Positions 2,945 to 62,566 of a DNA stretch of 64,000 nucleotides are shown here, one piece after another. The position numbers and the translations under genes are program-made. The notes under the pieces were generated by a model. It saw only the letters and a program-made list of their open reading frames with translations, did no database searches and was not told the DNA's origin. The first letter of the stretch is position 1, and every line of letters begins with the position of its first letter. Where the stretch lies: IMG/VR virus record IMGVR_UViG_3300035212_003113, positions 1 to 64,000 of that record; one strand, given 5' to 3'.

Positions 2945-2970
2945 CTAAAGCCGGAGTCCCCCGATCCTGA
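2945..2970 (+). promoter_or_regulatory. CTAAA-N13-GATCCTGA motif copy 1
   Basis: CTAAA gccggagtccccc GATCCTGA aggt CGA; promoter role inferred. Confidence 0.65.
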
Positions 2971-3018
2971 AGGTCGAACCCGCCGCAATCGACCGCATCA
3001 CTAACCAGCAACAATAGG

Positions 3019-3231
3019 ATGGTTATGTACGACGACAACTTTGATCACGACAACTATTGCTTTGCAGATCCAGGTGGTAACTCCGCATTGCGTGCAGCTA
3101 CACGCCGCAATCCACGCAACATCCCTTGCCCGACTTGCAAGGAACCAAACCGCTTGACTCCTGCTGATAAAGCTCGCGGCTATCAGTGCGACTCATGCGC
3201 AGATAGGGATGAACGCGGCGGGGACTACTGA
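3019..3231 (+). CDS. small CxxC-CxxC zinc-ribbon-like protein
   Basis: CPTC...CDSC; paralog of 38141..38323. Confidence 0.7.
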   Translation: MVMYDDNFDHDNYCFADPGGNSALRAATRRNPRNIPCPTCKEPNRLTPADKARGYQCDSCADRDERGGDY

Positions 3232-3274
3232 GTAAGAAATATCTATTCTTGTACAGCACTAACAAGGACGGCAT

Positions 3275-3571
3275 ATGAAACACGTTATTTCTGGCAGCGG
3301 CGCTCATCGTATCGAGTGGGGTTCTGCCATTGGTGAGATGACCGGGTATCGTGGCATTGCACAACTCGAGATTGATGGCAAAGTATTCTGCGCTACCACT
3401 GAATACTGGGCGGGAACCCTGCCACCCTTCTTTGAGATCCGGCCTGTTGCCTATACGGAAGACTATCGAAAAGATGGCATCACTGAGGCTGACCAAAGAA
3501 GTCTAAAGGCTTCGATGGATTTCATTAGCCGCTCTTTCTCTGGTGTATCTAACCACAGCCCGAAAGAATAA
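3275..3571 (+). CDS. hypothetical protein
   Basis: ORF with AAGGA SD. Confidence 0.7.
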   Translation: MKHVISGSGAHRIEWGSAIGEMTGYRGIAQLEIDGKVFCATTEYWAGTLPPFFEIRPVAYTEDYRKDGITEADQRSLKASMDFISRSFSGVSNHSPKE

Positions 3572-3572
3572 A

Positions 3573-3887
3573 ATGATTTCTCTACCATTTCATTCCATCA
3601 GCGAGCGACGCCCTAGCGACGGGCAAGAAGTGGCCTGGATTAGACGTGGAGCGGCATTTGGTTTTGATTCTTTCGAGATTCGCTATGATACCGCAGATTA
3701 TTGCTGGTTTGAACTAGGCGAAGATGGCGAGCACAACGGCACCCAGATCGGCTACAGCGGCGAAGAATCTCTTGAAGGTTGCCGCCTAGAAGTAATGTTC
3801 GGGAATGAAACCGCAGACCCGGAAACTCTCTGGTGTTCCATGGAAGAAATCTGGAAGATTCTTGACACAGAAAATCCGCAGCCGTGA
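3573..3887 (+). CDS. hypothetical protein
   Basis: ORF tiling between neighbours; start at second Met of track ORF. Confidence 0.7.
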   Translation: MISLPFHSISERRPSDGQEVAWIRRGAAFGFDSFEIRYDTADYCWFELGEDGEHNGTQIGYSGEESLEGCRLEVMFGNETADPETLWCSMEEIWKILDTENPQP

Positions 3888-4147
3888 AGCTGGATGACTG
3901 GGAGATGCGGGTCGCATTTGCTAAGGAAGACTGGCCGGAGGTTATTTCTATTATGGAATCTACCTTCGGTATCTCCCTGGTTGGCAGACCTACAAGAATC
4001 AATAGAGGCTTTTCTCAGTACCCAGAGATCTGGATCTGCATGCCACGCGGCGGCGCTGAATACGGTTGGTCAGGCCGATCCGGCTTTACCCAGGGACCGC
4101 TAGGCATTCCGATAGGCGAAGATATACAAATCTTTACCACAAAATAA
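3884..4147 (+). CDS. family A paralog
   Basis: MKLDDWEMRVAFAKEDW...TFG...YGW...GF. Confidence 0.8.
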   Translation: MKLDDWEMRVAFAKEDWPEVISIMESTFGISLVGRPTRINRGFSQYPEIWICMPRGGAEYGWSGRSGFTQGPLGIPIGEDIQIFTTK

Positions 4148-4160
4148 ATCAGGAGCAATC

Positions 4161-4634
4161 ATGCTGAGCAGCCGTACCCTCACGATCATGCGTGGCCTGC
4201 CCGGTAGCGGCAAGAGCCACCTCGCACACGCCCTTGCAAACATTCCCGGAGTTTCTCCCGCTCCGGTCTTCTCCACCGATGATTTCTTCATGGTGGATGG
4301 GGAGTACCGCTTTGACGGCAAGCTCCTCGGCAAACACCATGCGGCTAATCTGGCCCGTGCGGTTGCTGCTATGGATGCAGGAACTTCCCATATTATTATT
4401 GACAATACTAACACGCAGGCTTGGGAAGCCCGCGAGTATGTTCGTAACGCGGAGCGATGTGGATATCGCGTACAGTTTATTGAGCCTGCAACCGCATGGG
4501 CGCGAGATCCTGAAGAGTGTGCCCGCCGCAACTCTCATGGCGTACCGTTGCATGCTATTCGTAGTATGTTGGCCCGCTGGGAGACAGATCTGACTGTCGA
4601 GGCCTGCCTGGCAGCCAAGGCCCCCTGGGAATAA
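4161..4634 (+). CDS. P-loop kinase (AAA_33 / polynucleotide-kinase-like)
   Basis: MRGLPGSGKS Walker A, IIIDNTN, RNSHGVP motifs. Confidence 0.8.
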   Translation: MLSSRTLTIMRGLPGSGKSHLAHALANIPGVSPAPVFSTDDFFMVDGEYRFDGKLLGKHHAANLARAVAAMDAGTSHIIIDNTNTQAWEAREYVRNAERCGYRVQFIEPATAWARDPEECARRNSHGVPLHAIRSMLARWETDLTVEACLAAKAPWE

Positions 4635-4649
4635 TCAAGATAGAAAATC

Positions 4650-5036
4650 ATGAAACTTGATACCTGGGAAACTATTTCTTCAATCATTGAAGCCGGTGGT
4701 GTTTACAAAAACGGGTATTACTGCGTTCGCAACAGCAGGGGCCGGCTTCACCGGGATGACGGACCCGCTGCCATATATCCAGATGGTACTCAGTGTTGGT
4801 ACCAGGATGGCGGGCTTCACCGGGGTGATGGGCCAGCTATTATCTATCCAGATGGTACTCAATACTGGTGCCGGAATGGCAAGCGTCACCGGGATAACGG
4901 ACCAGCTATTATCTATCCAGATGGTACTCAGGAATGGTACAGGGCTGGACAGAGAGTGCCAGCCCCGCCCGCCCTAAAGCCGGACCCGCCCGATCCTGAG
5001 CGGTGCCCCGAACGCCACCAACAAGGAGCAATATGA
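4650..5036 (+). CDS. HRxDGPA-repeat protein (3 repeats)
   Basis: shared N-term plus repeats; C-term reads through motif copy 2. Confidence 0.85.
   Translation: MKLDTWETISSIIEAGGVYKNGYYCVRNSRGRLHRDDGPAAIYPDGTQCWYQDGGLHRGDGPAIIYPDGTQYWCRNGKRHRDNGPAIIYPDGTQEWYRAGQRVPAPPALKPDPPDPERCPERHQQGAI
4974..4999 (+). promoter_or_regulatory. motif copy 2
   Basis: CTAAA gccggacccgccc GATCCTGA. Confidence 0.6.
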
Positions 5037-5221
5037 ACAGCGCCAAGCGAATGTCTGATCTTTTTCTGAACGTCGTACTGATGCATGGCTTCCGCGAGAC
5101 GGATGAGCGCTTTTTCACAGCCTTCAATAACGGGGGCGACTTTGACCCGTTCGCGTTTGATGCCACCTATGACGTACTCATCGAGGACGTGCAGCGCTAT
5201 ATCCTCCCGCAGGAAGCATGA
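5033..5221 (+). CDS. hypothetical protein
   Basis: AAGGAG SD, ATGA overlaps. Confidence 0.65.
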   Translation: MNSAKRMSDLFLNVVLMHGFRETDERFFTAFNNGGDFDPFAFDATYDVLIEDVQRYILPQEA

Positions 5222-5454
5222 TGCTCACCATTATTGCTGCCCTTCTTGCCGGCGCTGTAGTAGGCCGCGTCACGGCAGCCCTGGCCGGAGAAACGATGAT
5301 CTCGAGCTACTGGATCTTCGTCATCGCCTGTCTCTGGCTGTTGGATCGCACGGTTGGTGTGACCATCACAGAGACGTGGCGAAGTGTTCTGGCTGAAAAG
5401 AGGCGCATCCGTGAAGAAGAAAGAGCACGGCACGCACTCGAGGGAGACGTATGA
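5218..5454 (+). CDS. small membrane protein
   Basis: two hydrophobic segments. Confidence 0.6.
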   Translation: MMLTIIAALLAGAVVGRVTAALAGETMISSYWIFVIACLWLLDRTVGVTITETWRSVLAEKRRIREEERARHALEGDV

Positions 5455-5568
5455 CCACACTCGTCCAGCTCACAAAGAATGCGACTCTGTAGTATTCATC
5501 CGAAATTCATAGACAAAGCTGGCCTCGGCACGCTGCCCGCCTATTCCTAATCTACCAAGGAGTCCCCC

Positions 5569-5931
5569 ATGACCGCTGATATCCTGCCTATCCGTGGAAA
5601 AACGCTTACCGATATTACCGGTATCAAGGATGATGACGTCCGCTTTCATTGCGATGATGGTACCGTTTATCGGATGCGCCACCATCAGTCATGCTGCGAG
5701 AGCGTTGGCATCGAGCAGGTCGATGGCGAAATCTCGGATCTTATTGGACCGCCACTCTCTATTGCAGAGGTGGTGTTCAAGGAGCGAGACTCGGAATACG
5801 GCAGCGAAGGCTGGACCTTTTACCGCTTTGCTACGGTCAAAGGCTATGTCACAATCCGCTGGAGCGGCAGCTCTAATGGCTATTACTCCATCCGCGTAGA
5901 CTTTGATCAGGATGATGGTGATGACTACTAG
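5569..5931 (+). CDS. phage-type hypothetical protein
   Basis: CCESV...WTFY...SNGYYS pattern recalled from phage hypotheticals; AAGGAG SD. Confidence 0.75.
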   Translation: MTADILPIRGKTLTDITGIKDDDVRFHCDDGTVYRMRHHQSCCESVGIEQVDGEISDLIGPPLSIAEVVFKERDSEYGSEGWTFYRFATVKGYVTIRWSGSSNGYYSIRVDFDQDDGDDY

Positions 5932-6175
5932 AGGTCAAAAGTTTGTGTCTTTTGTACTGCGCGGGCACGCCCTGCCCGATCAGTATGTGCATGAATCTCG
6001 TACCAGGCTTGTTCTACTTGATGCAGGCGATAGCCATTGGCGAGCTTTCTATAAGGAACGCCGCCTTTGGAACAAGCCGCTATCTGATTGGGACTATGAT
6101 TATCTACGTCCGCTGGGCGTAGCCTTCTCGGACACAGGCGCTGCTATACGCTGGGCTTCTGGCGGGAAGGCATAA
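5921..6175 (+). CDS. hypothetical protein
   Basis: 11-nt overlap with upstream stop. Confidence 0.6.
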   Translation: MTTRGQKFVSFVLRGHALPDQYVHESRTRLVLLDAGDSHWRAFYKERRLWNKPLSDWDYDYLRPLGVAFSDTGAAIRWASGGKA

Positions 6176-6188
6176 GGGGGAATCGCTT

Positions 6189-6383
6189 ATGAGCCATAAT
6201 GAAAAGATGCAGCTTTGGATTCAGGATGCCGGCTGGCGAGGCTGCTGCATTGTCATCGCCCTAGATGAAGCCGCTGCCCGCGCTATGATGGCAGCAGAAA
6301 CCTGGAACTATTCTGCTGATGAGCCGCTGCGCGCTTATGATCTGGATGCCGGTTTCAAGCATGTGAATATCGGCGACCAGTGA
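6189..6383 (+). CDS. hypothetical protein
   Basis: ORF with GGGGG SD. Confidence 0.6.
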   Translation: MSHNEKMQLWIQDAGWRGCCIVIALDEAAARAMMAAETWNYSADEPLRAYDLDAGFKHVNIGDQ

Positions 6384-6476
6384 AGAAGTTTCTTTTCTTT
6401 ATAAACAGTAATAACCTTTGCTGTAAGGTCTACTTGTTAGACAGCCGATATCGGCAGAAAGAACAGGTAGAAGTAA

Positions 6477-6908
6477 ATGAATAAGTTGGAAAAGATTGTT
6501 GAAGGCGGCGTCGTAAAGGTTCGAGTTGTCGGCTCTCCCGGCAAGGCAAGTCATCCACTAATGTCTAGCAATGGACAATTCTTCATAAATGTAGGGGCCG
6601 CAGCCAAGGCCTTTGTCCTTAGCTCAGCAACTATAAACAACGCAATCAAGAGTGGCCGTCCTGTAAAAGGACAAACAATTAGGCTTGCCACTGAGCAAGA
6701 AGTCGACCGGTTTATTGCAGTTAAAATCTCTGCACCAGCTCATTTGCCACCTAGCCCTGCACCAAATAAGCTAGACTTTGCCCCCGGTAAACTCTATGAG
6801 GGTAAGATCGCTGCCGATGGTAGCGTAACACTGACACGCCGCCTTGCAGGTCTTGCAGAAGTGCCAAGGGATATTCTAAATGATATTGAATGGAATACCT
6901 CTGCCTAA
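6477..6908 (+). CDS. hypothetical protein
   Basis: 143-aa ORF. Confidence 0.65.
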   Translation: MNKLEKIVEGGVVKVRVVGSPGKASHPLMSSNGQFFINVGAAAKAFVLSSATINNAIKSGRPVKGQTIRLATEQEVDRFIAVKISAPAHLPPSPAPNKLDFAPGKLYEGKIAADGSVTLTRRLAGLAEVPRDILNDIEWNTSA

Positions 6909-6911
6909 AAA

Positions 6912-7118
6912 ATGAAACTATTTGCTGAATACCTACTGGTAGATAGGGATCGCAAGTTTGTGCTGAGATTTGGCAGCGACACGTCCTCTCATCACATGCT
7001 ACATATGCGGGATGTTTATAGCGTTATCTATAGGCATCTTGCCCCGCTGCACATAGCTGCGGTAGATGTATTAGGTGAGCTGCATGTTCTAGATCTGGAC
7101 CGGCATGAAGCTGATTAG
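6912..7118 (+). CDS. family B paralog
   Basis: MKLFAEY...DVLGEL. Confidence 0.7.
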   Translation: MKLFAEYLLVDRDRKFVLRFGSDTSSHHMLHMRDVYSVIYRHLAPLHIAAVDVLGELHVLDLDRHEAD

Positions 7119-7302
7119 CTTTTATCAGATACGCACCGACAGCGGCTTGCGCTACTCGCAAGTACACGGCTCACATACCCGCGAAGAGGCAATTTTAGAA
7201 TACCATAGACTGCAATGGTTTCAGGATCGTCCGCTGCGACTGTATGAAATAAGCGTGCTAGGCGATGAGCGCGACATAACTCCAGAGGGCTTTAGATCAT
7301 GA
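7105..7302 (+). CDS. family B paralog
   Basis: MKLISFY...SVLGDER; 14-nt overlap. Confidence 0.7.
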   Translation: MKLISFYQIRTDSGLRYSQVHGSHTREEAILEYHRLQWFQDRPLRLYEISVLGDERDITPEGFRS

Positions 7303-7547
7303 GTGTTTGCAATCACCTTCCGGGCACGTTCTGTCACGACTGCTATAGCATTGCCGCTACGCCCCATGCCGATGGCACCCTTTCTACTGGTGCGCTGCCG
7401 CAGTCTACCAGTCCTGCCGAAGCAGATATCCTAAAACAACTACAGGAGCTGCGCGACGAAGTGGAAGAAATCCAGGAAGATTTACGCTACCTGCTATCGC
7501 ATGTGGCACCGGCAGGCAGCCGCCGTCGCTATAAAAAGCGGACATAG
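7299..7547 (+). CDS. hypothetical protein (Cys-rich N-term, coiled coil)
   Basis: ATGA overlap. Confidence 0.6.
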   Translation: MSVCNHLPGTFCHDCYSIAATPHADGTLSTGALPQSTSPAEADILKQLQELRDEVEEIQEDLRYLLSHVAPAGSRRRYKKRT

Positions 7548-7548
7548 T

Positions 7549-7758
7549 ATGAAGCTAATCAGTCACTATCTAGTATACGATAACCGCAATCTCCTGCGAG
7601 GAAGCATTCCACCGGAAAGGTTTACCACGCAAACCCGCGCGCAAATAACCGCATACTTCTTATCCGGTCTAGCCTACTTTGTTCGCAGACGCATGTTGCC
7701 TCTGCGCTTTATTGAGGTTAACGTACTAGGCGACCAGCGCGAGGTAAGTTTAGACTGA
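7549..7758 (+). CDS. family B paralog
   Basis: MKLISHY...NVLGDQR. Confidence 0.7.
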   Translation: MKLISHYLVYDNRNLLRGSIPPERFTTQTRAQITAYFLSGLAYFVRRRMLPLRFIEVNVLGDQREVSLD

Positions 7759-7967
7759 TGGAATCCCCACACGCCAGCAACATAGACTTCATGATAAAAG
7801 CTCTGGAGTCTAATCCAGATAAGAAGTTTATTGTTCTAGAAGGCAGCGGTCCCGGAGATACTCTGCTGATTGTCTGGCGGAGCGCCAACGAACGAGCGCC
7901 CGGACAATACTACGAGATCCGCGTTGCAGAGATCAAAGAAACTGCTTTCATTCAGGTGAGCAAATGA
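7758..7967 (+). CDS. hypothetical protein
   Basis: TGATG overlap. Confidence 0.6.
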   Translation: MESPHASNIDFMIKALESNPDKKFIVLEGSGPGDTLLIVWRSANERAPGQYYEIRVAEIKETAFIQVSK

Positions 7968-8483: not shown

Positions 8484-8485
8484 CC

Positions 8486-9039: not shown

Positions 9040-9099
9040 CATATGCTGGCTACCAGACGCCGCCCGCCCCTTTTGCTATGAATACTCGAGTGACTTGTC

Positions 9100-11859: not shown

Positions 11860-11889
11860 TATACAACTTACTGACAGGTCGGGCCGGCC

Positions 11890-11915
11890 CTAAAGCCGGT
11901 GCCGCCCGATCCTGT
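11890..11915 (+). promoter_or_regulatory. motif copy 3
   Basis: CTAAA gccggtgccgccc GATCCTGT aggt CGA. Confidence 0.65.
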
Positions 11916-12023
11916 AGGTCGAGCCGGTCGCCGCCTCCGGTAAATGCAAGTGGCGGAGAGACAGGAACCAAAACCCCTAATGGTTAGGGGCTAGGCGAAT
12001 GTCCATCAGAAAAGGAAGAGCAC

Positions 12024-12440: not shown

Positions 12441-12451
12441 TCAGGGGGTTT

Positions 12452-14076: not shown

Positions 14077-14091
14077 CAGAGCGCCCCGGCC

Positions 14092-14117
14092 CTAAAGCCG
14101 GCGGCTCCCGATCCTGA
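14092..14117 (+). promoter_or_regulatory. motif copy 4
   Basis: CTAAA gccggcggctccc GATCCTGA ccgt CGA. Confidence 0.65.
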
Positions 14118-14155
14118 CCGTCGAACCGCCCCGCACCGCTAACCCCGGAGTGCTT

Positions 14156-17865: not shown

Positions 17866-17887
17866 TCGGTAGCAGGACCGCCCGGCC

Positions 17888-17913
17888 CTAAAGGCGGCCC
17901 GGCCCGATCCTGA
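17888..17913 (+). promoter_or_regulatory. motif copy 5
   Basis: CTAAA ggcggcccggccc GATCCTGA. Confidence 0.65.
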
Positions 17914-17929
17914 AGCGGCGAAGGACGAC

Positions 17930-22498: not shown

Positions 22499-23074
22499 AT
22501 GACCCAGGTGAGCTTTTCGTGCCGCATTTGCGGGGCTTTTGTATCAAGGCCTGATCGCAGTAGATCCGGCGGCTGTTGTTCGCCGAAGTGCTCTGCGCAT
22601 ATTCGTCATGCCGCTGCCGTAAGCCGCAATAGATTTGCCGCAATGTGCACAAGCCCAGATCCCGTAGACAGCAAGATAAATCTGGCTCCAGATTGCAGTG
22701 CCATTGATGCGCTACCAGTCCTGACCCAGGAAGATCTCTGGATCTTCCTGCTGCATATCGCAGCCACCTGCTGTACCGCTAGGCAGGCGGAGTGCATCCG
22801 GTTGCATTTTGGTTCTGGCTTGACCCAGAGGGAGATCGCCAATGAGATCGGTCTGAATCAGTCTACGGTTGCTCATTCGCTATATGGCATCAAGCTAACT
22901 TCCAATCGGGAGCAAGATGCAAAAAATCAAGGAAAGTATTATGGCGGCGCCATAAGGAGCATCAGGAAGCAGCTGCTTGATAAGTCAAAGCAAGAACAGC
23001 TACAGGCTTTGCTGACCCGCGCCGGTACGCTAGTAGAGCGCCCCGGCCCTAAAGCCGGGCCGCCCCGATCCTGA
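22499..23074 (+). CDS. Cys-rich N-term plus sigma-70 region 4-like HTH protein
   Basis: TARQAECIRLHFGSGLTQREIANEIGLNQSTV. Confidence 0.7.
   Translation: MTQVSFSCRICGAFVSRPDRSRSGGCCSPKCSAHIRHAAAVSRNRFAAMCTSPDPVDSKINLAPDCSAIDALPVLTQEDLWIFLLHIAATCCTARQAECIRLHFGSGLTQREIANEIGLNQSTVAHSLYGIKLTSNREQDAKNQGKYYGGAIRSIRKQLLDKSKQEQLQALLTRAGTLVERPGPKAGPPRS
23049..23074 (+). promoter_or_regulatory. motif copy 6
   Basis: CTAAA gccgggccgcccc GATCCTGA agga CGA. Confidence 0.65.
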
Positions 23075-23105
23075 AGGACGACCCCGAACCACGGCAAAGG
23101 ATGTT

Positions 23106-29634: not shown

Positions 29635-29942
29635 AGCTGGACCATTACTGTATCAGTGAAGCATTCGAGCGCGAGGATTGGCCAGCGGCCATTGCAGCCC
29701 TCACTGCGCACTTTAATATCCCTATGCCAGCGGACTATCGGTTGTATCTGCTGCGTCACAATGGCTTCCAGCCGGAGATAGAGATCAATCACGGTAATCG
29801 CATCTACTCCTGGCGCAAGTCACTAGGCTTTGAAAGCTGGCCCAAATGGCGTAAGCTTTATCCCGAGAACAGCATCGTTGTAGATATTTATGCGCCGCCC
29901 GCAGAGGCCGCCGGGCCTAAAGCCGGGTCGCCCCGATCCTGA
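29631..29942 (+). CDS. family A paralog
   Basis: MKLDHY...EDW...HF...YSW...GF. Confidence 0.8.
   Translation: MKLDHYCISEAFEREDWPAAIAALTAHFNIPMPADYRLYLLRHNGFQPEIEINHGNRIYSWRKSLGFESWPKWRKLYPENSIVVDIYAPPAEAAGPKAGSPRS
29917..29942 (+). promoter_or_regulatory. motif copy 7
   Basis: CTAAA gccgggtcgcccc GATCCTGA accc CGA. Confidence 0.65.
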
Positions 29943-29963
29943 ACCCCGAACGCCGGAGGCACC

Positions 29964-32173: not shown

Positions 32174-32185
32174 CGCGGGCCGGGC

Positions 32186-32211
32186 CTAAAACCGGACGCG
32201 CCCGATCCTGT
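32186..32211 (+). promoter_or_regulatory. motif copy 8
   Basis: CTAAA accggacgcgccc GATCCTGT gcgg CGA. Confidence 0.65.
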
Positions 32212-32255
32212 GCGGCGACGGTCCCCGCCGCTATTTTAAATAGGACGCCTTCGCA

Positions 32256-33983: not shown

Positions 33984-34008
33984 GAATCGTACGCAGTCCC
34001 CGCCGGGC

Positions 34009-34034
34009 CTAAAGCCGGCCCCCGCCGATCCTGA
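34009..34034 (+). promoter_or_regulatory. motif copy 9
   Basis: CTAAA gccggcccccgcc GATCCTGA aggc CGA. Confidence 0.65.
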
Positions 34035-34064
34035 AGGCCGAACCCCGAACCCGGAGTGAGTACG

Positions 34065-36253: not shown

Positions 36254-36277
36254 TAATTCTGTCAGGTCGCGCCGGGC

Positions 36278-36303
36278 CTAAAGCCCGGTGCCCCCGATCC
36301 TGA
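36278..36303 (+). promoter_or_regulatory. motif copy 10
   Basis: CTAAA gcccggtgccccc GATCCTGA agcc CGA. Confidence 0.65.
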
Positions 36304-36331
36304 AGCCCGAACCGCAACCCCGGAGTAAAAC

Positions 36332-38033: not shown

Positions 38034-38041
38034 AGCCGCCC

Positions 38042-38067
38042 CTAAAGCCCGCCCCCGCCGATCCTGC
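38042..38067 (+). promoter_or_regulatory. motif copy 11
   Basis: CTAAA gcccgcccccgcc GATCCTGC tgac CGA. Confidence 0.6.
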
Positions 38068-38140
38068 TGACCGAGCCCCGCAGCATCGCGGCGCTGTCCG
38101 TAAACAAGTAAACGCAAAAGCTAGCAAAGGATACTTCTTC

Positions 38141-39498: not shown

Positions 39499-39763
39499 CG
39501 CTGAGACGCGCCCGCGCTTCTCTCACGACTGCGACCGGTGTTGCTTCACGGGCCATTACACTGCAGAAGGCAGGGAAGTAGATGGCTGGTTTTGCGCAGG
39601 CGCTGTTCTAGGTGGATCTATTATTTTGCGGTACGGGGATGACCCGCCTGACTATAGCAGTATCCCTCTTGTCGTAGCAATGAATTGTATTGATGATCAC
39701 CTAGATTCATACCGCCGCGTTCTAGCTGATTATAATAAGATGAGGCAGACGCCCCGGCCCTAA
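39491..39763 (+). CDS. hypothetical protein
   Basis: PRFSHDCDRC; stop is the TAA of motif copy 12. Confidence 0.65.
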   Translation: MSSAETRPRFSHDCDRCCFTGHYTAEGREVDGWFCAGAVLGGSIILRYGDDPPDYSSIPLVVAMNCIDDHLDSYRRVLADYNKMRQTPRP

Positions 39764-39785
39764 AGCCGGGGACCGCCGATCCTGA
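39760..39785 (+). promoter_or_regulatory. motif copy 12
   Basis: CTAAA gccggggaccgcc GATCCTGA aggc CGA. Confidence 0.65.
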
Positions 39786-39812
39786 AGGCCGAACCCCCGA
39801 CCCGGAGACGCA

Positions 39813-40602: not shown

Positions 40603-40635
40603 TTCATCAGTCTAAGCGGACACGGCGCGTCGGCC

Positions 40636-40661
40636 CTAAACCCCGCACCGCCCGATCCCGA
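40636..40661 (+). promoter_or_regulatory. motif copy 13 (variant)
   Basis: CTAAA ccccgcaccgccc GATCCCGA. Confidence 0.6.
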
Positions 40662-40707
40662 ACGGCGGCGACCCCGCCACGCAGAATACCTAACCAGGAG
40701 CATAGTA

Positions 40708-42549: not shown

Positions 42550-42597
42550 ATAGTCTGAATTCATCAGGCACCGGCCAGCTGCTAGGCGGCGCCGGGC

Positions 42598-42623
42598 CTA
42601 AAGCCGGGCCGGGCCGATCCTGA
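42598..42623 (+). promoter_or_regulatory. motif copy 14
   Basis: CTAAA gccgggccgggcc GATCCTGA gcgg CGA. Confidence 0.65.
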
Positions 42624-42644
42624 GCGGCGACCGGCGGCCACCAC

Positions 42645-49227: not shown

Positions 49228-49906
49228 AGAAAAAATACTTATTGCCGCATCTGACAACAGGTACAGCCATGTTCCGTACGCAGACCTGCATCGCGTTGCC
49301 GTCAGGAGCGAAACAGTACCTGTCGGATCAGTAGAGTTTGTCCGGCGCTACGCAGAGATAAATGATGTTGTTCTGCCGCAGCTACCTACCTATCCTGCCG
49401 CACTAAACCATTATCTAGGTCGGCTAGTATGGCGCTGTCGGTATGCTGACGTACCAGCGGATGCCTTTTGCAAACCACTGCGAACAAAACTTTTTACCGG
49501 CGGCATCCGCTCTACCATTACGGAGACTGTGCCTGACGAAGAGATCGTCTTGGCAGCAGAATCCGTAGCATTTGATGCAGAGTTTCGATACTACATATTA
49601 GACGGCAGGATTATTGGCCACTCCAGGTATGACGCCGGAGATGAGCCGGCTGAGCCTGATCCGGCAGTGGTGCAGGCAATGGTTCGTGATTATGCCGATG
49701 CCCCTTGCGGGTATGCGCTTGATGTAGGTATTTGCGGCGGCAAGACGCTGCTCGTAGAGGTAAACGACGGCTGGTCTATTGGCTACTACCGCTGGGGCGA
49801 CATGAAGCCGCGAGCCTACATGGATCTGATCTCTGCTCGCTGGCAGGAAATACTTGCCGAGCAGACGGGGGCGGTCGGGCCTAAAACCGCCGGGTCGCGA
49901 TCATGA
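49220..49906 (+). CDS. ATP-grasp domain protein (DUF4343-type)
   Basis: FCKP..KLFTG, EFRYYI, YALDVG, LVEVND. Confidence 0.75.
   Translation: MSEEKILIAASDNRYSHVPYADLHRVAVRSETVPVGSVEFVRRYAEINDVVLPQLPTYPAALNHYLGRLVWRCRYADVPADAFCKPLRTKLFTGGIRSTITETVPDEEIVLAAESVAFDAEFRYYILDGRIIGHSRYDAGDEPAEPDPAVVQAMVRDYADAPCGYALDVGICGGKTLLVEVNDGWSIGYYRWGDMKPRAYMDLISARWQEILAEQTGAVGPKTAGSRS
49881..49906 (+). promoter_or_regulatory. motif copy 15 (variant)
   Basis: CTAAA accgccgggtcgc GATCATGA. Confidence 0.55.
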
Positions 49907-49922
49907 TGCGCCGAGGTTGCCA

Positions 49923-56350: not shown

Positions 56351-56372
56351 GCACTTGGCAGCGGGGGCGGCC

Positions 56373-56398
56373 CTAAAGCCGGACCCGCCCGATCCCGT
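56373..56398 (+). promoter_or_regulatory. motif copy 16 (variant)
   Basis: CTAAA gccggacccgccc GATCCCGT gtgg CGA. Confidence 0.6.
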
Positions 56399-56432
56399 GT
56401 GGCGACCGCCGCGCCCTATGCCGGAGCCTATT

Positions 56433-58511: not shown

Positions 58512-58684
58512 ATTTGTTACGAGCGGTTTCTCTTGTTGAAGGAGACGCAGAGGCTGAGAGCGAGGAAGAGGTTGTTTCTGCCTGGCAATATCTGCATGAT
58601 AGCGGAGCCGCATACAGCCTGCAAGGCTGGTATGGACGTACTGCAATCTACCTATTGCAGCGTGGCGTTATCAGGGGTCAGTGA
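58508..58684 (+). CDS. small hypothetical protein
   Basis: AWQYLHDSG...LQGWYGRTA pattern. Confidence 0.65.
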   Translation: MNLLRAVSLVEGDAEAESEEEVVSAWQYLHDSGAAYSLQGWYGRTAIYLLQRGVIRGQ

Positions 58685-59468
58685 GTTCGTATTCTGCAAA
58701 ATCTATGAGCACCGGTTGCCCGCCTCTAGACATCAGGTTCTCTTCGTGAAGATCGTTCCATGACACGCCATTCTCTAGGAGATCGCACAGCGCTTGCCTG
58801 ATATCTTCGCCGACCTCATCGCAGAGGTGTACATGTCGACTGCTTGCAGGTATGCTTTTTGCGCCTGCTATTCTAGTGACTGCCAGGTTGGCCAAATGCC
58901 TTGCGGTATCGACATGGGTACCGGCCGTAGTACGCACCACCTCTTCTGCTATACGCTGTACGCACTCGCCGTCATATGTCTCTGGTATACCGCGGGCTGC
59001 TAGCCGTTGGGCTACACAGCGTACTACGCTGTCTGCTAGCAGATTGCTGCTCGCCATCTGATAAAGACTGGATGCAATCATATGAAGAAAAGGCTCATTG
59101 TTTAGGCATGCCCGCTGCTCTTTCTTGCTTCTGTTGCATAGCGGAGCAAACAACCGCTCTGAAGCCGCTGGGCTGAGTGGCTCTAATGCTTCCATTAGCA
59201 CATAGCCACCGTGACCCACGAGCCAATCTGCTTCGTATATGTCTGGCAGGATGGCGGCCGCGAATGGACTTATTGTGCTTTTTATACTTTGTATTTTTCT
59301 AGTAGCCCGCAACTCTTGATCTGCAACAGACCTGCCTATTATTTTTAGCGCTGCCGGCGAGTCGTGCCATGAAGCGGCATATACCTTTCCATGCGCGCCT
59401 TCTCCTAGCACAGCACCGGCACCAGTTCTGCTTATGATCTCTTGATCGTTATACCGAGGGCTGTCCAT
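58671..59468 (-). CDS. protein-kinase-like (ePK/APH fold) protein
   Basis: LGEGAHGKVY, ALKII, DLHEENLM, LIDF. Confidence 0.7.
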   Translation of the reverse strand: MDSPRYNDQEIISRTGAGAVLGEGAHGKVYAASWHDSPAALKIIGRSVADQELRATRKIQSIKSTISPFAAAILPDIYEADWLVGHGGYVLMEALEPLSPAASERLFAPLCNRSKKEQRACLNNEPFLHMIASSLYQMASSNLLADSVVRCVAQRLAARGIPETYDGECVQRIAEEVVRTTAGTHVDTARHLANLAVTRIAGAKSIPASSRHVHLCDEVGEDIRQALCDLLENGVSWNDLHEENLMSRGGQPVLIDFAEYELTDP

Positions 59469-59492
59469 GGAGTCTTGTACAACCGGGCGGGC

Positions 59493-59518
59493 CTAAAGCC
59501 CGCGTCGCTCGATCCTGA
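59493..59518 (+). promoter_or_regulatory. motif copy 17
   Basis: CTAAA gcccgcgtcgctc GATCCTGA agcc CGA. Confidence 0.65.
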
Positions 59519-59549
59519 AGCCCGAAAACGAACTGTAGGAGAACCTTTT

Positions 59550-60082: not shown

Positions 60083-60739
60083 GTGAAGATATTTCATATT
60101 TCTGATACGCACGGCTCAGGCTTCTGGGATACGCCGCTAGGAGCAGACATCGATGTTGTTGTTCATAGCGGCGATGCCTTTCCTAACTCTACTCGTGGTC
60201 ATGTTGCAACCGAGCAGGTATATCAGTCCGGCTGGCTTAAACAGTTTGTAGAACCAATACGGACATGGTTGAATGGTCGCCCATTCATTTATGTACCGGG
60301 TAATCATGACTATATCGAGTTTGCAGACTTCCTACCTGCGCACCGAATTGATACAGACCCTATTCATGTGGCAGGCAAGTCCTGGCGAGGATTTCGCCAG
60401 ATACCATGGATTCGCGGGGAGTGGGCGGGTGAAATACATGCGCCAGACATGCAGGATATAATCGAAAGCATCTTCGACTGCGATAGTTCACTCTCTGCCC
60501 CAGAGGGCGACGTACTGGTGTGTCACTCTCCACCCGCCGGTGTATTTGATGCCAGCCCTAATGGCCTTTTCCATTACGGTATCAGCGCACTGAGCAATGC
60601 CCTTCAATATAGGAACCACGCTTTCAAGGCTGTGCTTTTCGGTCACGTACACCAGGAAAAGTACTGCCAGATGCGAAGGATGGGTATTATATTTAGCAAT
60701 GCCGCAGACAATCCTGGCGGCACCGTGGAGCTGCCTTGA
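60083..60739 (+). CDS. calcineurin-like metallophosphoesterase
   Basis: SDTH, SGD, GNHD, HSPP, GHVH. Confidence 0.85.
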   Translation: MKIFHISDTHGSGFWDTPLGADIDVVVHSGDAFPNSTRGHVATEQVYQSGWLKQFVEPIRTWLNGRPFIYVPGNHDYIEFADFLPAHRIDTDPIHVAGKSWRGFRQIPWIRGEWAGEIHAPDMQDIIESIFDCDSSLSAPEGDVLVCHSPPAGVFDASPNGLFHYGISALSNALQYRNHAFKAVLFGHVHQEKYCQMRRMGIIFSNAADNPGGTVELP

Positions 60740-61293
60740 AGCTTTCTGCTGCCGCTGCCCTAGTTGGAATTCCTGATGACTTCAGGCCAGCTAAGATAGG
60801 AGATCCATATAATTATCGTACCAAGATATTTGTACGCAATCGAGAATACATAAGAATCTTCTTACTGCAAGACGGCTCACTTTATTCAAAAGAATATGGC
60901 TACATGGCCAAGACTGATGGCGGGCGACTGACCCCAGACAGCTCTGTATCCAGAGGGCCGGCTATCCTAGTGTACTATCAGGATGGCTCCCCTTCTTCGC
61001 AGGCGTGGGCACGCGAGGGCGAGATTCATCGTGACAGCAGCAATGGTCCAGCACTGGTAAAGTATCACAAAGATGGAGATATGTATTCTGCTGAGTATCG
61101 GAATGGCGGGCGACTGCATCGTCCAAGGAAGCGAGGACCGGCTCTTTATTATGAGCGCGGCAGCGGTGATATTTACTTTGGCTTTTGGGAGGATGGCATC
61201 TGCATTGCAGAGTTCGAAGGGCCAATCCTAAAAGATTATGATCAGCCATTAGAGTTTTTTGAATCTAGTTATAAGAAAGTGCGGAGAAGTTAA
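60736..61293 (+). CDS. family D: MKL start plus divergent HRxxGPA repeats
   Basis: HRDSSNGPA, HRPRKRGPA. Confidence 0.7.
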   Translation: MKLSAAAALVGIPDDFRPAKIGDPYNYRTKIFVRNREYIRIFLLQDGSLYSKEYGYMAKTDGGRLTPDSSVSRGPAILVYYQDGSPSSQAWAREGEIHRDSSNGPALVKYHKDGDMYSAEYRNGGRLHRPRKRGPALYYERGSGDIYFGFWEDGICIAEFEGPILKDYDQPLEFFESSYKKVRRS

Positions 61294-61526
61294 TGAAGAA
61301 CGATATCCTTGGAATTGCACTACTTGCTGCTACGGCAGTTAACATTGCTATGTTTTTTGCCATCGCTGTTCCAGCGCTCGGTCTAGACGATGACGAAGAG
61401 AAGCCTGATCCGCCTGTGCCAGAGTTCAATTACACTGAGTCCCAGGTCCATTTTCTGCGGCGTGTGACAGATCCGGTAGAGACCGGCGGTTTGCAATGCT
61501 CCCGTTCTTATGCCTGTGAACCTTGA
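61293..61526 (+). CDS. small membrane-anchored protein
   Basis: N-terminal hydrophobic helix. Confidence 0.55.
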   Translation: MKNDILGIALLAATAVNIAMFFAIAVPALGLDDDEEKPDPPVPEFNYTESQVHFLRRVTDPVETGGLQCSRSYACEP

Positions 61527-61888
61527 TCGGGTTTTTCCGCAACTGCGCGCACCCAGACCTTTTCCGGCATCTCTGCGATGTTAGGCTCGTAGTATTCTTC
61601 TTCCTGATCAAACCGGATCTCATATCCGGTTGCAGTACCCATTTCTGCGCGTAGCTTGGCCTTGGCCTGCTCTTTGGCAACCGTAACTCCGCGATCTACA
61701 TCGCTGCCTTGGATATCTGCATAGCCTACTGCTGCCACCTCGCCCGCTTTTAATCCTGCGTTTGGGCTGGCAATCCAGTCTGGCTTGTCCTGAGCCAGGC
61801 GCATAATAACGCCATCCAAGGCACTGGCGGCTTCAGTATGGCCGCGCTCGTCCAGAAAGTTTGCGATTTTTATCAGGTCTTTTAGCAT
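61508..61888 (-). CDS. leader-family protein
   Basis: MLKDLIKIANFLDERGHTEAASALDGVI. Confidence 0.75.
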   Translation of the reverse strand: MLKDLIKIANFLDERGHTEAASALDGVIMRLAQDKPDWIASPNAGLKAGEVAAVGYADIQGSDVDRGVTVAKEQAKAKLRAEMGTATGYEIRFDQEEEYYEPNIAEMPEKVWVRAVAEKPDQGSQA

Positions 61889-61927
61889 AGCATCCTCGCT
61901 CCATATCCAATAAATTCATAGTAAGAC

Positions 61928-62227
61928 ATGAAGCTGAACCTGGCCAGAATCATACTTGATGCGCCCGAAGGCTGGGCGGTGCGTAACATCGGCAGGCAGC
62001 TAATCCTACTAAGTCCTCATGGTAAACATCCGAACTGCGAAATAGTTTTTACACTGCGAAAAGATGGATCTTTAATCTATAAAGACTACTACGAAAACGG
62101 CATCTTCCACCGCGAAGACGGCCCAGCAGTAACTGTATATAGCGAGTGCGGTAATACTGCAGAAGAGCTTTTCTACTGTCAGGGAAAGCTGTTAAACAGA
62201 AAGTGCTACAAGGATGAAGCTGAATAA
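61928..62227 (+). CDS. family D paralog
   Basis: MKLNLA...PEGW...HREDGPA. Confidence 0.75.
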   Translation: MKLNLARIILDAPEGWAVRNIGRQLILLSPHGKHPNCEIVFTLRKDGSLIYKDYYENGIFHREDGPAVTVYSECGNTAEELFYCQGKLLNRKCYKDEAE

Positions 62228-62528
62228 AGCGGCGGTGATTGCCGGACTACCTGACGGCTGGGAGCTGCAATACGATGGCGATATCATTTTGTATCAGATG
62301 GGAGACGCAGCAGTACAGCATGAATTCAGCGGCAACAACTTAATCAGTATTTCACATTTCCTAGAAGGAGAGCTGCACCGCGACCCTGTCAACGGGCCAG
62401 CTTATATTTGGTGGGTCGGCGATCAGGTTTATGAGAAATACTTTTTTGCTGGACTGCCTGCTGCCAGTCCCGCTGGCCACTACGGCGTGGTAAAAAAAGA
62501 TGACGGCAGCGTGCTACTTACTTACTAG
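62214..62528 (+). CDS. family D paralog
   Basis: MKLNKA...PDGW...HRDPVNGPA. Confidence 0.75.
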   Translation: MKLNKAAVIAGLPDGWELQYDGDIILYQMGDAAVQHEFSGNNLISISHFLEGELHRDPVNGPAYIWWVGDQVYEKYFFAGLPAASPAGHYGVVKKDDGSVLLTY

Positions 62529-62540
62529 AGCTGGCCGGAC

Positions 62541-62566
62541 CTAAAGACCGGTCGGGCCGATCCTGA
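62541..62566 (+). promoter_or_regulatory. motif copy 18
   Basis: CTAAA gaccggtcgggcc GATCCTGA. Confidence 0.6.

What the first reader, a model, noticed from the sequence alone, without database searches (positions are those of the whole stretch)
2945..62566. Eighteen copies of a strictly spaced tripartite motif CTAAA-N13-GATCCTGA-N4-CGA
CTAAA starts at 2945, 4974, 11890, 14092, 17888, 23049, 29917, 32186, 34009, 36278, 38042, 39760, 40636, 42598, 49881, 56373, 59493 and 62541. The spacer is exactly 13 nt and GC-rich in all 18. CGA follows GATCCTGN after exactly 4 nt in 13 of 18. All copies are on the + strand, and most lie about 10-110 nt upstream of a start (~150 nt for copy 14). The boxes resemble the sigmaD/sigma28 consensus (CTAAA-N16-CCGATAT), but here CTAAA to CCGAT is only 11 nt. 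That points to a distinct sigma factor, phage RNA polymerase or activator.
Basis: partly seen in the sequence, partly recalled or inferred. Interest (0 to 1): 0.85.

Follow-up and report, generated by a model that had tools for sequence, protein, structure and literature searches.

The report
Phage-specific promoter cassettes, jumbo phage
The repeated motif is real and is most likely the promoter that an uncultivated 372-kb freshwater phage places in front of about 76 early or middle genes; its sequence matches no known host or phage promoter type, and the protein that reads it was not identified.

Summary
In detail: 18 + strand copies against 0.27 expected by chance.

- **Source:** The window is part of a circular 371.7-kb jumbo-phage genome.
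- **Extent:** I read 171 kb of contiguous sequence. It holds 76 copies (75 on +, 1 on -), all inside one 144-kb block of co-oriented small genes.
- **Consensus:** The true consensus is longer than reported: CCGG-n-C-CTAAA-RMC ... YY-GATC(C/T)TG(A/T)-nnGnC(G/A).
- **Spacing:** The spacing is absolute. In this genome and its relatives, 130 copies have N13 and none has N9-12 or N14-18.
- **What is not essential:** The GC-rich spacer and the CCGAT are not essential. About 27 upstream copies ("class A") have AT-rich spacers, and half of those scanned follow an intrinsic terminator.
- **Window copies ("class B"):** These embed the CTAAA box in the loop of a GC-rich hairpin.
- **Position:** The motif ends a median 36 nt before a Shine-Dalgarno start codon.
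- **Conservation:** Both boxes are 92-93% conserved between related phages, against 58-71% for the flanks.

Best reading: a core promoter with sigma-70-family geometry, packaged in terminator/stem-loop-promoter cassettes like the PeSLs of T4-type phages, but with a non-sigma-70 consensus. No RNA polymerase or complete sigma gene was found in the roughly 185 kb read. The only lead is a Zn-ribbon protein with a sigma-region-4-like domain. The sigma-28 resemblance does not hold.

The parts
2939..2977 (+). Motif copy 1 (class B). CTAAA at 2945; next SD-preceded ATG at 3025.
   Evidence: 49.3 bits
4968..5006 (+). Motif copy 2. CTAAA at 4974; TGC in place of CGA; weak hairpin; next ATG at 5033.
11884..11922 (+). 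Motif copy 3. CTAAA at 11890; long hairpin in which CAGG pairs with CCTG; gene start at 12024; orthologous copy at L198:1020.
14086..14124 (+). Motif copy 4. CTAAA at 14092; upstream stop codon at -18; gene start at 14156; orthologous copy at L198:4091; homology to the relative breaks just after the motif.
17882..17920 (+). Motif copy 5. CTAAA at 17888; gene start at 17930; orthologous copy at L198:6295.
23043..23081 (+). Motif copy 6. CTAAA at 23049; overlaps the last 12 codons of the sigma4-like ORF, whose stop codon is the TGA of GATCCTGA; next gene at 23106; homology to relative L198 ends inside the motif.
29911..29949 (+). Motif copy 7. CTAAA at 29917; the upstream ORF stops at the motif's TGA; gene start at 29964.
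32180..32218 (+). Motif copy 8 (CTAAAA variant). CTAAA at 32186; gene start at 32256.
34003..34041 (+). Motif copy 9. CTAAA at 34009; gene start at 34065.
36272..36310 (+). Motif copy 10. CTAAA at 36278; perfect 9-bp stem around the CTAAA loop plus an outer TCAGG/CCTGA stem; gene start at 36332.
38036..38074 (+). Motif copy 11. CTAAA at 38042; poor hairpin; downstream start uncertain (TTG at 38141).
39754..39792 (+). Motif copy 12. CTAAA at 39760; the upstream ORF stops at the TAA inside CTAAA; gene start at 39813.
40630..40668 (+). Motif copy 13 (GATCCCG variant). CTAAA at 40636; gene start at 40708.
42592..42630 (+). Motif copy 14. CTAAA at 42598; 152 nt upstream of the MoxR-type AAA ATPase gene (start 42776).
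49875..49913 (+). Motif copy 15, the weakest (GATCATG, 26.5 bits). CTAAA at 49881; the R2K ATP-grasp ORF stops at the motif's TGA.
56367..56405 (+). Motif copy 16 (GATCCCG variant). CTAAA at 56373; follows the 1096-aa Laminin_G_3 gene and a terminator-like hairpin with a T-run; gene start at 56433 agrees with the public gene call.
59487..59525 (+). Motif copy 17. CTAAA at 59493; lies 25 nt beyond the start of a - strand gene (58671-59468), so it opens a new + strand unit; gene start at 59550 agrees with the public gene call.
62535..62573 (+). Motif copy 18. CTAAA at 62541; only 10 nt from the motif end to the ATG at 62577.
22499..23074 (+). ORF of 191 aa: an N-terminal Cys-rich Zn-ribbon followed by a sigma-70 region-4-type helix-turn-helix (residues about 85-130), with no region 2. 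It is a candidate DNA-binding transcription factor; a link to the motif is only inferred.
   Evidence: Pfam Sigma70_r4 E=2.3e-6; PHROG 'sigma factor' E=3.8e-5; conserved at full length in relatives; AF2 pLDDT 73.7; best but non-significant Foldseek hits are sigma factors and sigma4 domains; Atlas gives LuxR/GerE/sigma4 HTH

Best explanation
Each copy is most likely the core promoter of a phage transcription unit, packaged as a compact intergenic cassette.

Proposed geometry. The two invariant boxes, CCGGnC-CTAAA-RMC and YY-GATC(C/T)TG(A/T), are held exactly 13 nt apart. That places them about two helical turns apart, centre to centre. This is the geometry of a sigma-70-family promoter, or of an activator-plus-'-10' promoter like T4 middle promoters. 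The 5' leaders would then be about 5-100 nt, median about 30 nt, and they are C-rich and end in a GGAG-type Shine-Dalgarno sequence.

Two subclasses.
- Class A lies upstream of the window. Its spacer is AT-rich and it often follows a strong intrinsic terminator by 32-40 nt.
- Class B includes all 18 window copies. Its spacer is GC-rich and pairs with the sequence 5' of CTAAA. A hairpin of about -13 to -17 kcal/mol carries CTAAA in its loop and usually begins right after the upstream stop codon.

What is shown: the motif, its strict spacing, strand bias, positions, terminators, hairpin complementarity and conservation.

What is inferred: that it is a promoter, where transcription starts, and that a sigma-like or activator protein reads it. 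That protein could be phage-encoded or virion-delivered. The Zn-ribbon/sigma4-like protein at 22499-23074 is a candidate only.
For: 1. Non-random and all-or-none. There are 18 copies against 0.27 expected. A weight-matrix scan of 142 kb gives 73 + and 1 - hits at 25 bits or more, and nothing weaker.
2. Absolute spacing. Across this phage and its relatives, 130 copies have N13 and none has N9-12 or N14-18.
3. Position. The median distance from motif end to an SD-preceded start is 36 nt, interquartile range 28-59. The copies are intergenic or overlap only the last codons of the upstream ORF.
4. Orientation. 75 of the 76 copies share the strand of the genes.
5. Strand switches. The first copy of the block lies in the divergent gap directly after - strand genes (L191:9920). 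Window copy 17 likewise follows a - strand gene.
6. Terminators. In the class A stretch scanned, 10 of 20 copies have a GC-rich stem plus T-run ending 15-80 nt upstream, 7 of them at 32-40 nt. Transcription must therefore restart there.
7. No other conserved element lies within -40 to +70. Sigma-70-like sites are not enriched: 17 found against 22 expected.
8. Purifying selection. In 7 orthologous pairs the boxes are 92-93% identical, against 58-71% for flanks and spacer.
9. Spread. The motif occurs in at least 25 further metagenome stretches with the same strand bias.
10. Restricted distribution. All copies lie in one 144-kb block of small early/middle-type genes (tRNAs, RNA repair, rII-like, topoisomerase, ligase). 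No GC-rich-spacer copy occurs in the rest of the genome.
11. Candidate reader. A sigma-region-4-type DNA-binding protein is encoded in the block.
Against: - No transcript 5' ends are available, so promoter activity and the start site are inferred.
- No RNA polymerase, complete sigma factor, gp55, MotA or AsiA homologue was found in the roughly 185 kb read. About half of the genome remains unread.
- If these are the earliest promoters, a non-host consensus needs a factor that is present at injection. Nothing supports that directly.
- Three + strand genes that follow - strand genes have no copy (starts at 16844, 21330 and 61928), so at least one other promoter type or read-through must exist.
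- Some tandem copies in L043 have no ORF behind them.
- The two boxes share G-R-n-CCT-R, 22 bp apart. That would also fit two copies of one DNA-binding domain rather than sigma regions 4 and 2.
Confidence: 0.75

Rival explanations
1. Binding site of a phage regulator (activator or repressor) laid over an otherwise host-type promoter. The boxes would be an operator or activator site rather than the elements that the polymerase's specificity subunit reads. The two G-R-n-CCT-R half-sites, 22 bp apart, would bind two copies of one HTH protein such as the sigma4-like ORF.
For: The two boxes are a direct repeat (GGTCCTA / GATCCTG) two helical turns apart. An HTH protein of the sigma4/LuxR type is encoded in the block. 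GATCCT has A and T where a sigma-70 -10 hexamer needs A-11 and T-7 if transcription starts at the conserved C, 6 nt downstream.
Against: No -35/-10-like consensus exists anywhere else in the aligned flanks. Sigma-70-like sites are not enriched. The start codon can be as close as 10-17 nt to the second box, which leaves no room for a separate core promoter downstream. This rival shades into the best explanation in its T4-middle-promoter-like form.
Confidence: 0.12
2. An RNA-level signal on read-through transcripts: a processing site, a 3'-end stabilising hairpin, or a T-tract-less terminator between genes. The CUAAA loop and GAUCCUG would be read by a phage RNA-binding protein or nuclease.
For: Class B copies form GC-rich hairpins with CTAAA in the loop. 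Cognate arms pair better than non-cognate arms: -13.5 against -11.9 kcal/mol, p=0.0007, n=39. Compensatory arm changes occur between orthologues. The hairpin often starts right after the upstream stop codon. The region is rich in RNA-repair genes.
Against: The 27 class A copies have the same boxes but no hairpin, about -0.8 kcal/mol. Many of them sit just after efficient-looking intrinsic terminators and so would seldom be transcribed from upstream. The first copy of the block has no upstream co-oriented gene. The motif tracks the downstream start codon tightly. The hairpin may be an added function of class B rather than the function of the motif.
Confidence: 0.08
3. Primarily a recombination or mobility signal: repeated cassettes that mediate gene shuffling, like PeSL-mediated exchange, or the target of the HNH endonucleases encoded nearby. 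Any promoter activity would be secondary.
For: Homology between the window and relative L198 breaks at or just after two copies, 14092 and 23049, with different genes downstream. The copies flank ORFan-type small genes. PeSLs of T4-type phages are proposed to do this (PMC4122927).
Against: Only two breakpoints were seen, and other indels do not coincide with copies. Exact N13 spacing and the fixed distance to start codons are not needed for recombination. In PeSLs, recombination is a by-product of regulatory repeats.
Confidence: 0.04
4. Replication, partition or packaging sites (iterons, parS-like or pac-like repeats).
For: There are tandem arrays without ORFs at L043:2615-3381 and 4295-4633, the latter with 59-81 bp spacing.
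Against: The 76 copies are spread over 144 kb, almost all co-oriented with genes and placed 10-110 nt before start codons. Such sites are normally clustered at one locus.
Confidence: 0.01

Closest known systems
PeSL / PmSL cassettes of T4-type phages: composite terminator or stem-loop plus early or middle promoter motifs (Arbiol et al. 2010, PMC2839356; Comeau et al. 2014, PMC4122927)
   Same: They are repeated intergenic cassettes, co-oriented with genes, made of a stem-loop or terminator directly upstream of a bipartite promoter and followed by a Shine-Dalgarno sequence and start codon. They are concentrated in regions of small ORFan genes. Homology breakpoints between related phages fall at some copies. 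The genome also carries rII-like and type II topoisomerase genes, as T4-type phages do.
   Different: PeSL promoters are sigma-70-like (TTGACA-N17-TATAAT and variants), and PmSLs carry a MotA box. Here neither box resembles them. In class B copies the stem-loop is superimposed on the upstream box, with CTAAA in the loop, instead of lying upstream of it, and it has no T-tract. No gp55, MotA or AsiA homologue was found in the part of the genome read.
Sigma-28 (FliA/SigD) promoters, TAAA-N15-GCCGATAA (consensus from my own knowledge)
   Same: There is a TAAA-containing upstream box. In GC-rich-spacer copies a CCGAT appears. The weak, non-significant structural hits of the sigma4-like ORF include WhiG and sigma-28.
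   Different: CCGAT is absent from the AT-rich-spacer copies, which have TTGATC or CTGATC. It also lies 5 nt too close to TAAA. The invariant bases are GATCYTG, not GCCGATAA.
ECF-type promoters such as the PvdS iron-starvation box, TAAAT-N16-CGT (PMC2235872)
   Same: There is a TAAA(T)-type -35 box and a short -10 element. The overall length is almost the same: TAAA-N17-CTG here against TAAA-N17-CGT there. The predicted start falls 6-8 nt downstream.
   Different: The -10 triplet differs (CTG within an invariant GATCYTG). The upstream box is longer (CCGGnCCTAAARMC). No ECF sigma with a region 2 was found.
T4 middle promoters (MotA box centred at -30 plus a sigma-70 -10; sigma appropriation by MotA/AsiA; review PMC2988021 was listed but not read, so the details are from my own knowledge)
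   Same: The upstream box is centred near -30 rather than -33, and a strict short distance separates it from a -10-region element. The genes served are of the early/middle type.
   Different: There is no TGCTT box, no TAnnnT -10, and no MotA or AsiA Pfam hit in the regions read.
N4 virion-RNA-polymerase hairpin promoters (from my own knowledge)
   Same: There is a conserved sequence in and around a DNA hairpin upstream of the start site of early genes, and the consensus is not host-like.
   Different: The hairpin is absent from class A copies that carry the same boxes. The stems are longer and the loop is 5-7 nt. No giant RNA-polymerase-like protein was detected: the 2378-aa and roughly 1100-aa proteins look like tail fibres.

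Membership tests
Sigma-28 / FliA-type promoter | -10 element GCCGATAA (core CGA/CCGAT) conserved in all members | tested here: not met
   CCGAT is present in 16 of 18 window copies but absent from the AT-rich-spacer copies, which have TTGATC or CTGATC. The conserved bases are GATCYTG.
Sigma-28 / FliA-type promoter | TAAA -35 box separated from GCCGATAA by about 15 nt | tested here: not met
   TAAA is present, but the distance to CCGAT is 12 nt and to GATC 13-14 nt, with no variation.
Housekeeping sigma-70 promoter | TTGACA-N16-18-TATAAT-like hexamers upstream of the genes | tested here: not met
   No such consensus appears in the 110-nt alignment of 65 copies. Sigma-70-like sites number 17 against 22 expected in window 1-20000.
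PeSL-type terminator/promoter cassette (T4-type phages) | Stem-loop or terminator directly upstream of the promoter boxes | tested here: met
   In class A, GC-rich stems with T-runs end 32-40 nt upstream at 7 copies and 15-80 nt upstream at 10 of 20. In class B, a hairpin overlaps the upstream box.
PeSL-type terminator/promoter cassette (T4-type phages) | Shine-Dalgarno sequence and start codon at the 3' end; location among small variable genes | tested here: met
   The median distance to an SD-preceded start is 36 nt. The block consists mostly of ORFs under 150 aa without Pfam hits.
PeSL-type terminator/promoter cassette (T4-type phages) | Promoter part is sigma-70-like (or MotA-box middle type) | tested here: not met
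   It therefore works like a PeSL but is not a member in the strict sense.
PeSL-type terminator/promoter cassette (T4-type phages) | Copies coincide with indel or replacement breakpoints between close relatives | tested here: inconclusive
   Two breakpoints fall at copies 14092 and 23049, and others fall elsewhere. Only one 17-kb relative was compared.
ECF-sigma promoter (e.g. PvdS IS box TAAAT-N16-CGT) | Conserved -10 CGT (or GTC) at a fixed distance, and a cognate ECF sigma with regions 2 and 4 | tested here: not met
   CTG stands at the equivalent position. Only a region-4-like protein without region 2 was found.
N4-type hairpin promoter | Hairpin required in every promoter, plus a virion RNA polymerase gene | tested here: not met
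   Class A copies have no hairpin potential. No RNA polymerase was detected in about 185 kb. The rest of the genome was not read.
T7-type single-subunit RNA polymerase promoter | One contiguous conserved block of about 17-23 bp spanning the start site | tested here: not met
   The two boxes are separated by a variable spacer and the total span is about 32-38 bp.
Phage promoter in general | Transcripts start a few nt downstream of the motif | not testable with these tools
   No transcriptome data are available here.

The most novel reading that the evidence does not exclude
A clade of freshwater jumbo phages transcribes about 160 kb of early and middle genes from promoters with no resemblance to host sigma-70 promoters, although no phage RNA polymerase was found in the half of the genome read. 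This would need a new specificity device. It could be a virion-delivered or very early sigma-like factor, possibly split, with the Zn-ribbon/sigma-region-4 protein reading the CCGGnCCTAAA box near -30. The hairpin that presents CTAAA in its loop would then distinguish a later, regulated class B from an immediate class A.
Probability: 0.2. Interest if true: 0.75.

Novelty: new variant of a known kind. Interest (0 to 1): 0.55.

Why it matters
Promoter consensus sequences are the handle by which new sigma factors, sigma-appropriation systems and phage polymerases have been found (T4 MotA/AsiA, SPO1 gp28, N4, phiKZ, AR9). This one is crisp: 76 copies in the sequence read from one genome, and about 200 more in relatives. 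It has absolute spacing, a non-host consensus and two structural subclasses, in an uncultivated jumbo-phage clade. The motif gives an immediate operon map of about 160 kb of unannotated genes. It also gives a bait sequence for identifying the protein that reads it. Finally, it offers a test of whether PeSL-like cassettes drive gene shuffling outside the classical T4-like phages.

Tried and rejected
- **Sigma-28 reading:** rejected, because CCGAT is not conserved outside the GC-rich-spacer subclass.
- **Consensus RNA structure on the ungapped alignment (RNAalifold):** only 3 invariant pairs, uninformative because the stem registers differ.
- **First arm-swap test with the 18 window copies:** not significant (p 0.04-0.24). 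It became significant only with 39 copies.
- **Rfam:** only the tRNAs.
- **Nucleotide and protein searches against GenBank phages:** no close relative. Only distant hits of TilS and MoxR-type genes to PA5oct and to 634-642 kb uncultured phages. PA5oct promoters are sigma-70-like.
- **Giant 2378-aa and 1177-aa proteins as hidden virion RNA polymerases:** collagen-like or tail-fibre hits, or nothing.
- **tblastn with T4 gp55, gp45, gp44, gp62 and rpbA:** no significant match in 171 kb.
- **Regex for the DFDGD and GDK..HGNKG motifs of multisubunit polymerases** in all six frames of everything fetched: nothing.
- **ORFs next to the sigma4-like gene:** no region 2.
- **One contig look-up:** failed because the ORF start I guessed was wrong.
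- **A second motif, TATAG-n-GGGCGG, upstream of two - strand genes:** not general.
- **Bacterial genome scan:** a single hit on a 2.9-kb contig of a Geobacteraceae MAG that is itself a phage fragment, so it is only a weak host hint.

Full report
**1.
Shuffles give 0.27 expected.
- CGA follows 4 nt after the 8-mer in 13 of 18 copies. Three copies carry a variant 8-mer.
- Distances to the next Shine-Dalgarno-preceded start codon are 10-108 nt, and 152 nt for copy 14. Three of those starts coincide with independent public gene calls.

**2. Where the window comes from.**
- Exact-pattern scans of IMG/VR place the window on IMGVR_UViG_3300035212_003113, a 371,675-bp contig.
- The same genome was assembled three times at 371,645-371,689 bp in different circular permutations. 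It is therefore a complete circular or circularly permuted jumbo-phage genome.
- It has no close relative among GenBank phages.
- By chaining contig look-ups I read about 185 kb of it: ENA coordinates 196.7-371.7 kb, plus about 10 kb of the tail-fibre region just beyond, read from a closely related contig. The window is ENA 227.4-291.4 kb.
- From 206.6 to about 369.9 kb almost all genes are on one strand. Most are small ORFs without Pfam hits. Also present:
  - five tRNAs and a TilS-like PP-loop enzyme;
  - RNA ligases, Thg1 and a SpoU methylase;
  - MoxR/VWA pairs and rII-like genes;
  - type II topoisomerase, DNA ligase, Lon and GroEL.
- Tail-fibre-like giants on the other strand or side flank the block.

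**3. The motif is larger, sharper and more widespread than reported.**
- The 171 kb of contiguous sequence holds 75 + strand copies and one - strand copy.
- A weight matrix separates them cleanly. Every hit scores 25 bits or more, nothing scores 10-25 bits, and nothing scores in a shuffle.
- The alignment of 65 copies gives CCGG-n-C-CTAAA-R-M-C ... Y-Y-GATC-(C/T)-T-G-(A/T)-n-n-G-n-C-(G/A). C-1 and C+7 are invariant, and C-5, G-4 and G-3 are 88-97% conserved. No other conserved element lies between -40 and +70.
- A scan of JGI metagenomes with a 22-base class B pattern found 25 further stretches from several freshwater data sets. These carry 195 copies (146 distinct), with the same strong strand bias within each stretch.
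- Across everything fetched, the spacing CCTAAA-N-GATCYTG is 13 in 130 cases and never 9-12 or 14-18.
- An unsaturated IMG/VR scan for the GC-rich-spacer form found no copy in the other roughly 60% of this genome.

**4. There are two subclasses.**
- Class A runs from ENA 206.6 to 219.5 kb, just upstream of the window. Copies lie about 400 bp apart. They read CCGGTC-CTAAA-AACATTnTCTTTT-GATCCTGT, with an AT-rich spacer and no CCGAT.
- Class B takes over from about 220 kb, at 0.8-7 kb intervals, out to 350.6 kb. All 18 window copies belong to it, and its spacer is 77-100% G+C.
- The GC-rich spacer and the sigma-28-like CCGAT are therefore features of one subclass, not of the motif.

**5. Class B copies form a hairpin.**
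- In class B the spacer pairs with the sequence 5' of CTAAA (CCGG with CCGG, often CAGG with the CCTG of the second box). CTAAA then sits in the loop of a GC-rich hairpin.
- With 39 copies, cognate arms pair better than swapped arms: -13.5 against -11.9 kcal/mol, p=0.0007. Class A has no such potential, at about -0.8 kcal/mol.
- Orthologous copies in relatives keep the hairpin through changes in both arms.
- The effect is modest because all arms are similar, and the test with only 18 copies was not significant.

**6. Evidence that it is a promoter.**
- The motif ends a median 36 nt before an SD-preceded start codon.
- It is co-oriented with the genes in 75 of 76 cases.
- The first copy of the block lies in the divergent gap directly after - strand genes. 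Window copy 17 likewise follows a - strand gene.
- In the class A stretch, strong intrinsic terminators (GCCCCGGC-loop-GCCGGGGC plus a T-run) end 32-40 nt upstream of CTAAA at 7 copies. Terminator-like sites end 15-80 nt upstream at 10 of 20 copies. Transcription that stops there must restart.
- Sigma-70-like sites are not enriched.
- In seven orthologous pairs from two related phages the boxes are 92-93% identical. The flanks are 58-67% identical and the spacer core 71%.
- Upstream ORFs frequently end at stop codons inside the motif: the TAA of CTAAA, the TGA of GATCCTGA or of TTGATC. Others end at -18 or -15, just before the hairpin. The boxes are therefore not conserved for coding reasons, and the packing is extremely tight.

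**7. Geometry.**
- If transcription starts at the conserved C-(G/A)-A, 5-7 nt after the second box, CTAAA is centred near -30 and GATCCT spans roughly -13 to -7.
- TAAA-N17-CTG has almost the same length as the PvdS iron-starvation box TAAAT-N16-CGT. Counted from TAAA to the end of the second box, it is 2 nt shorter than TAAA-N15-GCCGATAA of sigma-28.
- The layout is thus compatible with a sigma-70-family holoenzyme or with a T4-middle-type activator-plus-'-10' arrangement.
- It does not fit a contiguous T7-type promoter. It does not fit an obligatory N4-type hairpin promoter either, because class A has no hairpin.
- The boxes also share G-R-n-CCT-R, 22 bp apart. This keeps open a reading in which two copies of one DNA-binding domain bind them.

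**8. Who reads it.**
- I found no RNA polymerase, no sigma region 2, and no gp55, MotA or AsiA in the roughly 185 kb read. This rests on Pfam run on 205 ORFs, precomputed Pfam in the gene tables, tblastn with T4 proteins, and catalytic-motif regexes.
- The one lead is window ORF 22499-23074, 191 aa. It has a Cys-rich Zn-ribbon followed by a sigma region-4-type helix-turn-helix (Pfam Sigma70_r4 2.3e-6; PHROG 'sigma factor' 3.8e-5).
- Its full length is conserved in relatives at 63-83% identity, but no more distant homologues were found.
- The AlphaFold model has pLDDT 73.7. It has no significant PDB match, and its best weak matches are sigma factors and isolated sigma4 domains. The ESM Atlas places it among LuxR/GerE/sigma4 HTH proteins.
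- It is a plausible reader of one box, but nothing links it to the motif directly. Its last 12 codons overlap copy 6.

**9. Comparison with what is known.**
- The closest known system in architecture is the PeSL/PmSL cassette of T4-type phages: a stem-loop or terminator directly upstream of an early or middle promoter, followed by SD and start codon. PeSLs are repeated among small variable genes and implicated in modular shuffling (PMC4122927; PMC2839356).
- Class A copies have exactly that layout. Class B copies compress it by superimposing the stem-loop on the upstream box.
- The promoter itself is not sigma-70-like, so this works like a PeSL but fails that defining feature.
- Homology between the window and a 17-kb relative breaks at two copies, with different genes downstream. 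That is suggestive of shuffling, but too little to conclude.

**10. Rivals.**
- An RNA-level signal fits the class B hairpin. It does not fit class A, the upstream terminators, or the first copy of the block.
- A regulator site over a host-type promoter is hard to separate from the activator version of the main explanation. It lacks any host-type consensus and any room for one.
- Replication or packaging sites do not fit the dispersed, gene-linked distribution.

**11. Verdict.**
- The motif is real, and it is very probably the main early/middle promoter of this phage clade. It has a new consensus and an unidentified reader.
- That makes it a new variant of a known kind of element.

Noticed in passing
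L043:2615-3381 and L043:4295-4633 (ENA about 217.5-219.5 kb, 8-10 kb upstream of the window): Tandem arrays of motif copies with no ORF behind them. Six copies lie 59-81 bp apart and are each followed by T-rich sequence. Seven copies lie 48-208 bp apart and are followed by a repeated gtcaacgggacaaccgggg(a/g)cggg segment. They could be promoter arrays for short non-coding RNAs or polymerase sinks.
   Followed up: partly
L043 - strand copy at about 2844 (ENA 217,727), facing the + copy at L043:2723: This is the only opposite-strand copy. It is convergent with a + copy about 90 bp away, so the two would give overlapping antisense transcripts. Five of the dense loci of relatives also carry exactly one opposite-strand copy (L210, L212, L216, L225, L226), so the arrangement looks conserved.
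   Followed up: partly
window 30-2843, 4161-4634, 10274-11083: Nine ORFs match Pfam DUF6745. This is a tandemly amplified paralogue family at the start of the window.
   Followed up: no
L130:3013-5100 (ENA about 206.6-208.7 kb): Four class A copies are followed by a near-identical 5' leader, gacaggg...ccccttccccctgtctgtgagg, which can form a hairpin (gacaggg/ccctgtc) just before the Shine-Dalgarno sequence of paralogous small genes.
   Followed up: no
window 12482-35886; 18507-19139; 27087-27599; 62938-63456; L187 10519-14362; L194 8116-8862 and 16438-16908: A large RNA and tRNA maintenance set. It holds five tRNAs (one called tRNA-Ser with the unusual anticodon ACT), a TilS-like PP-loop protein, a HAD_SAK_2-like protein, a SpoU methylase, T4 Rnl1-like and Rnl2-like ligases, Thg1 and a 2'-5' RNA ligase.
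   Followed up: no
window 42776-45187 and L194 5529-8112: Two separate MoxR-type AAA ATPase plus DUF2201 (VWA/metallopeptidase) gene pairs occur in one phage genome. The first pair is followed by an M16 peptidase-like gene (45800-46954).
   Followed up: no
window 15618-16776 (-), 20280-21308 (-), 58671-59468 (-), 61508-61888 (-): Isolated - strand genes interrupt the + block. One is an HNH endonuclease (16123-16773) and one has weak kinase/APH-like hits (58671-59465). Relative L198 is 1.6 kb and 0.9 kb shorter over the two intervals that hold the first two of these, so they look like insertions. The + genes right after three of them (starts 16844, 21330, 61928) have no motif copy.
   Followed up: partly
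L191 about 9280-9300 and 9810-9830, - strand (ENA 205,994 and 206,530): TATAG-(n)-GGGCGG occurs upstream of two - strand genes next to the tail-fibre gene. It could be a different (late?) promoter type, but no further copies were found in the 171 kb read.
   Followed up: partly
L204 (CAJBRY010000167.1, 2.9 kb, binned in an uncultured Geobacteraceae MAG): This is the only hit of the class B pattern in 185,579 bacterial and archaeal genomes. The contig is about 70% identical to two genes of this phage, so it is a phage fragment. It is a weak host hint or a binning artefact.
   Followed up: partly
L230 1-13534 (just beyond the + block): Four consecutive proteins of about 1100 aa (1122+, 1081, 1082, 1177 aa), one with a weak Peptidase_S74 hit, plus a 2378-aa collagen-like protein at L191:700-7836. 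This is an unusually large set of fibre or spike candidates.
   Followed up: partly
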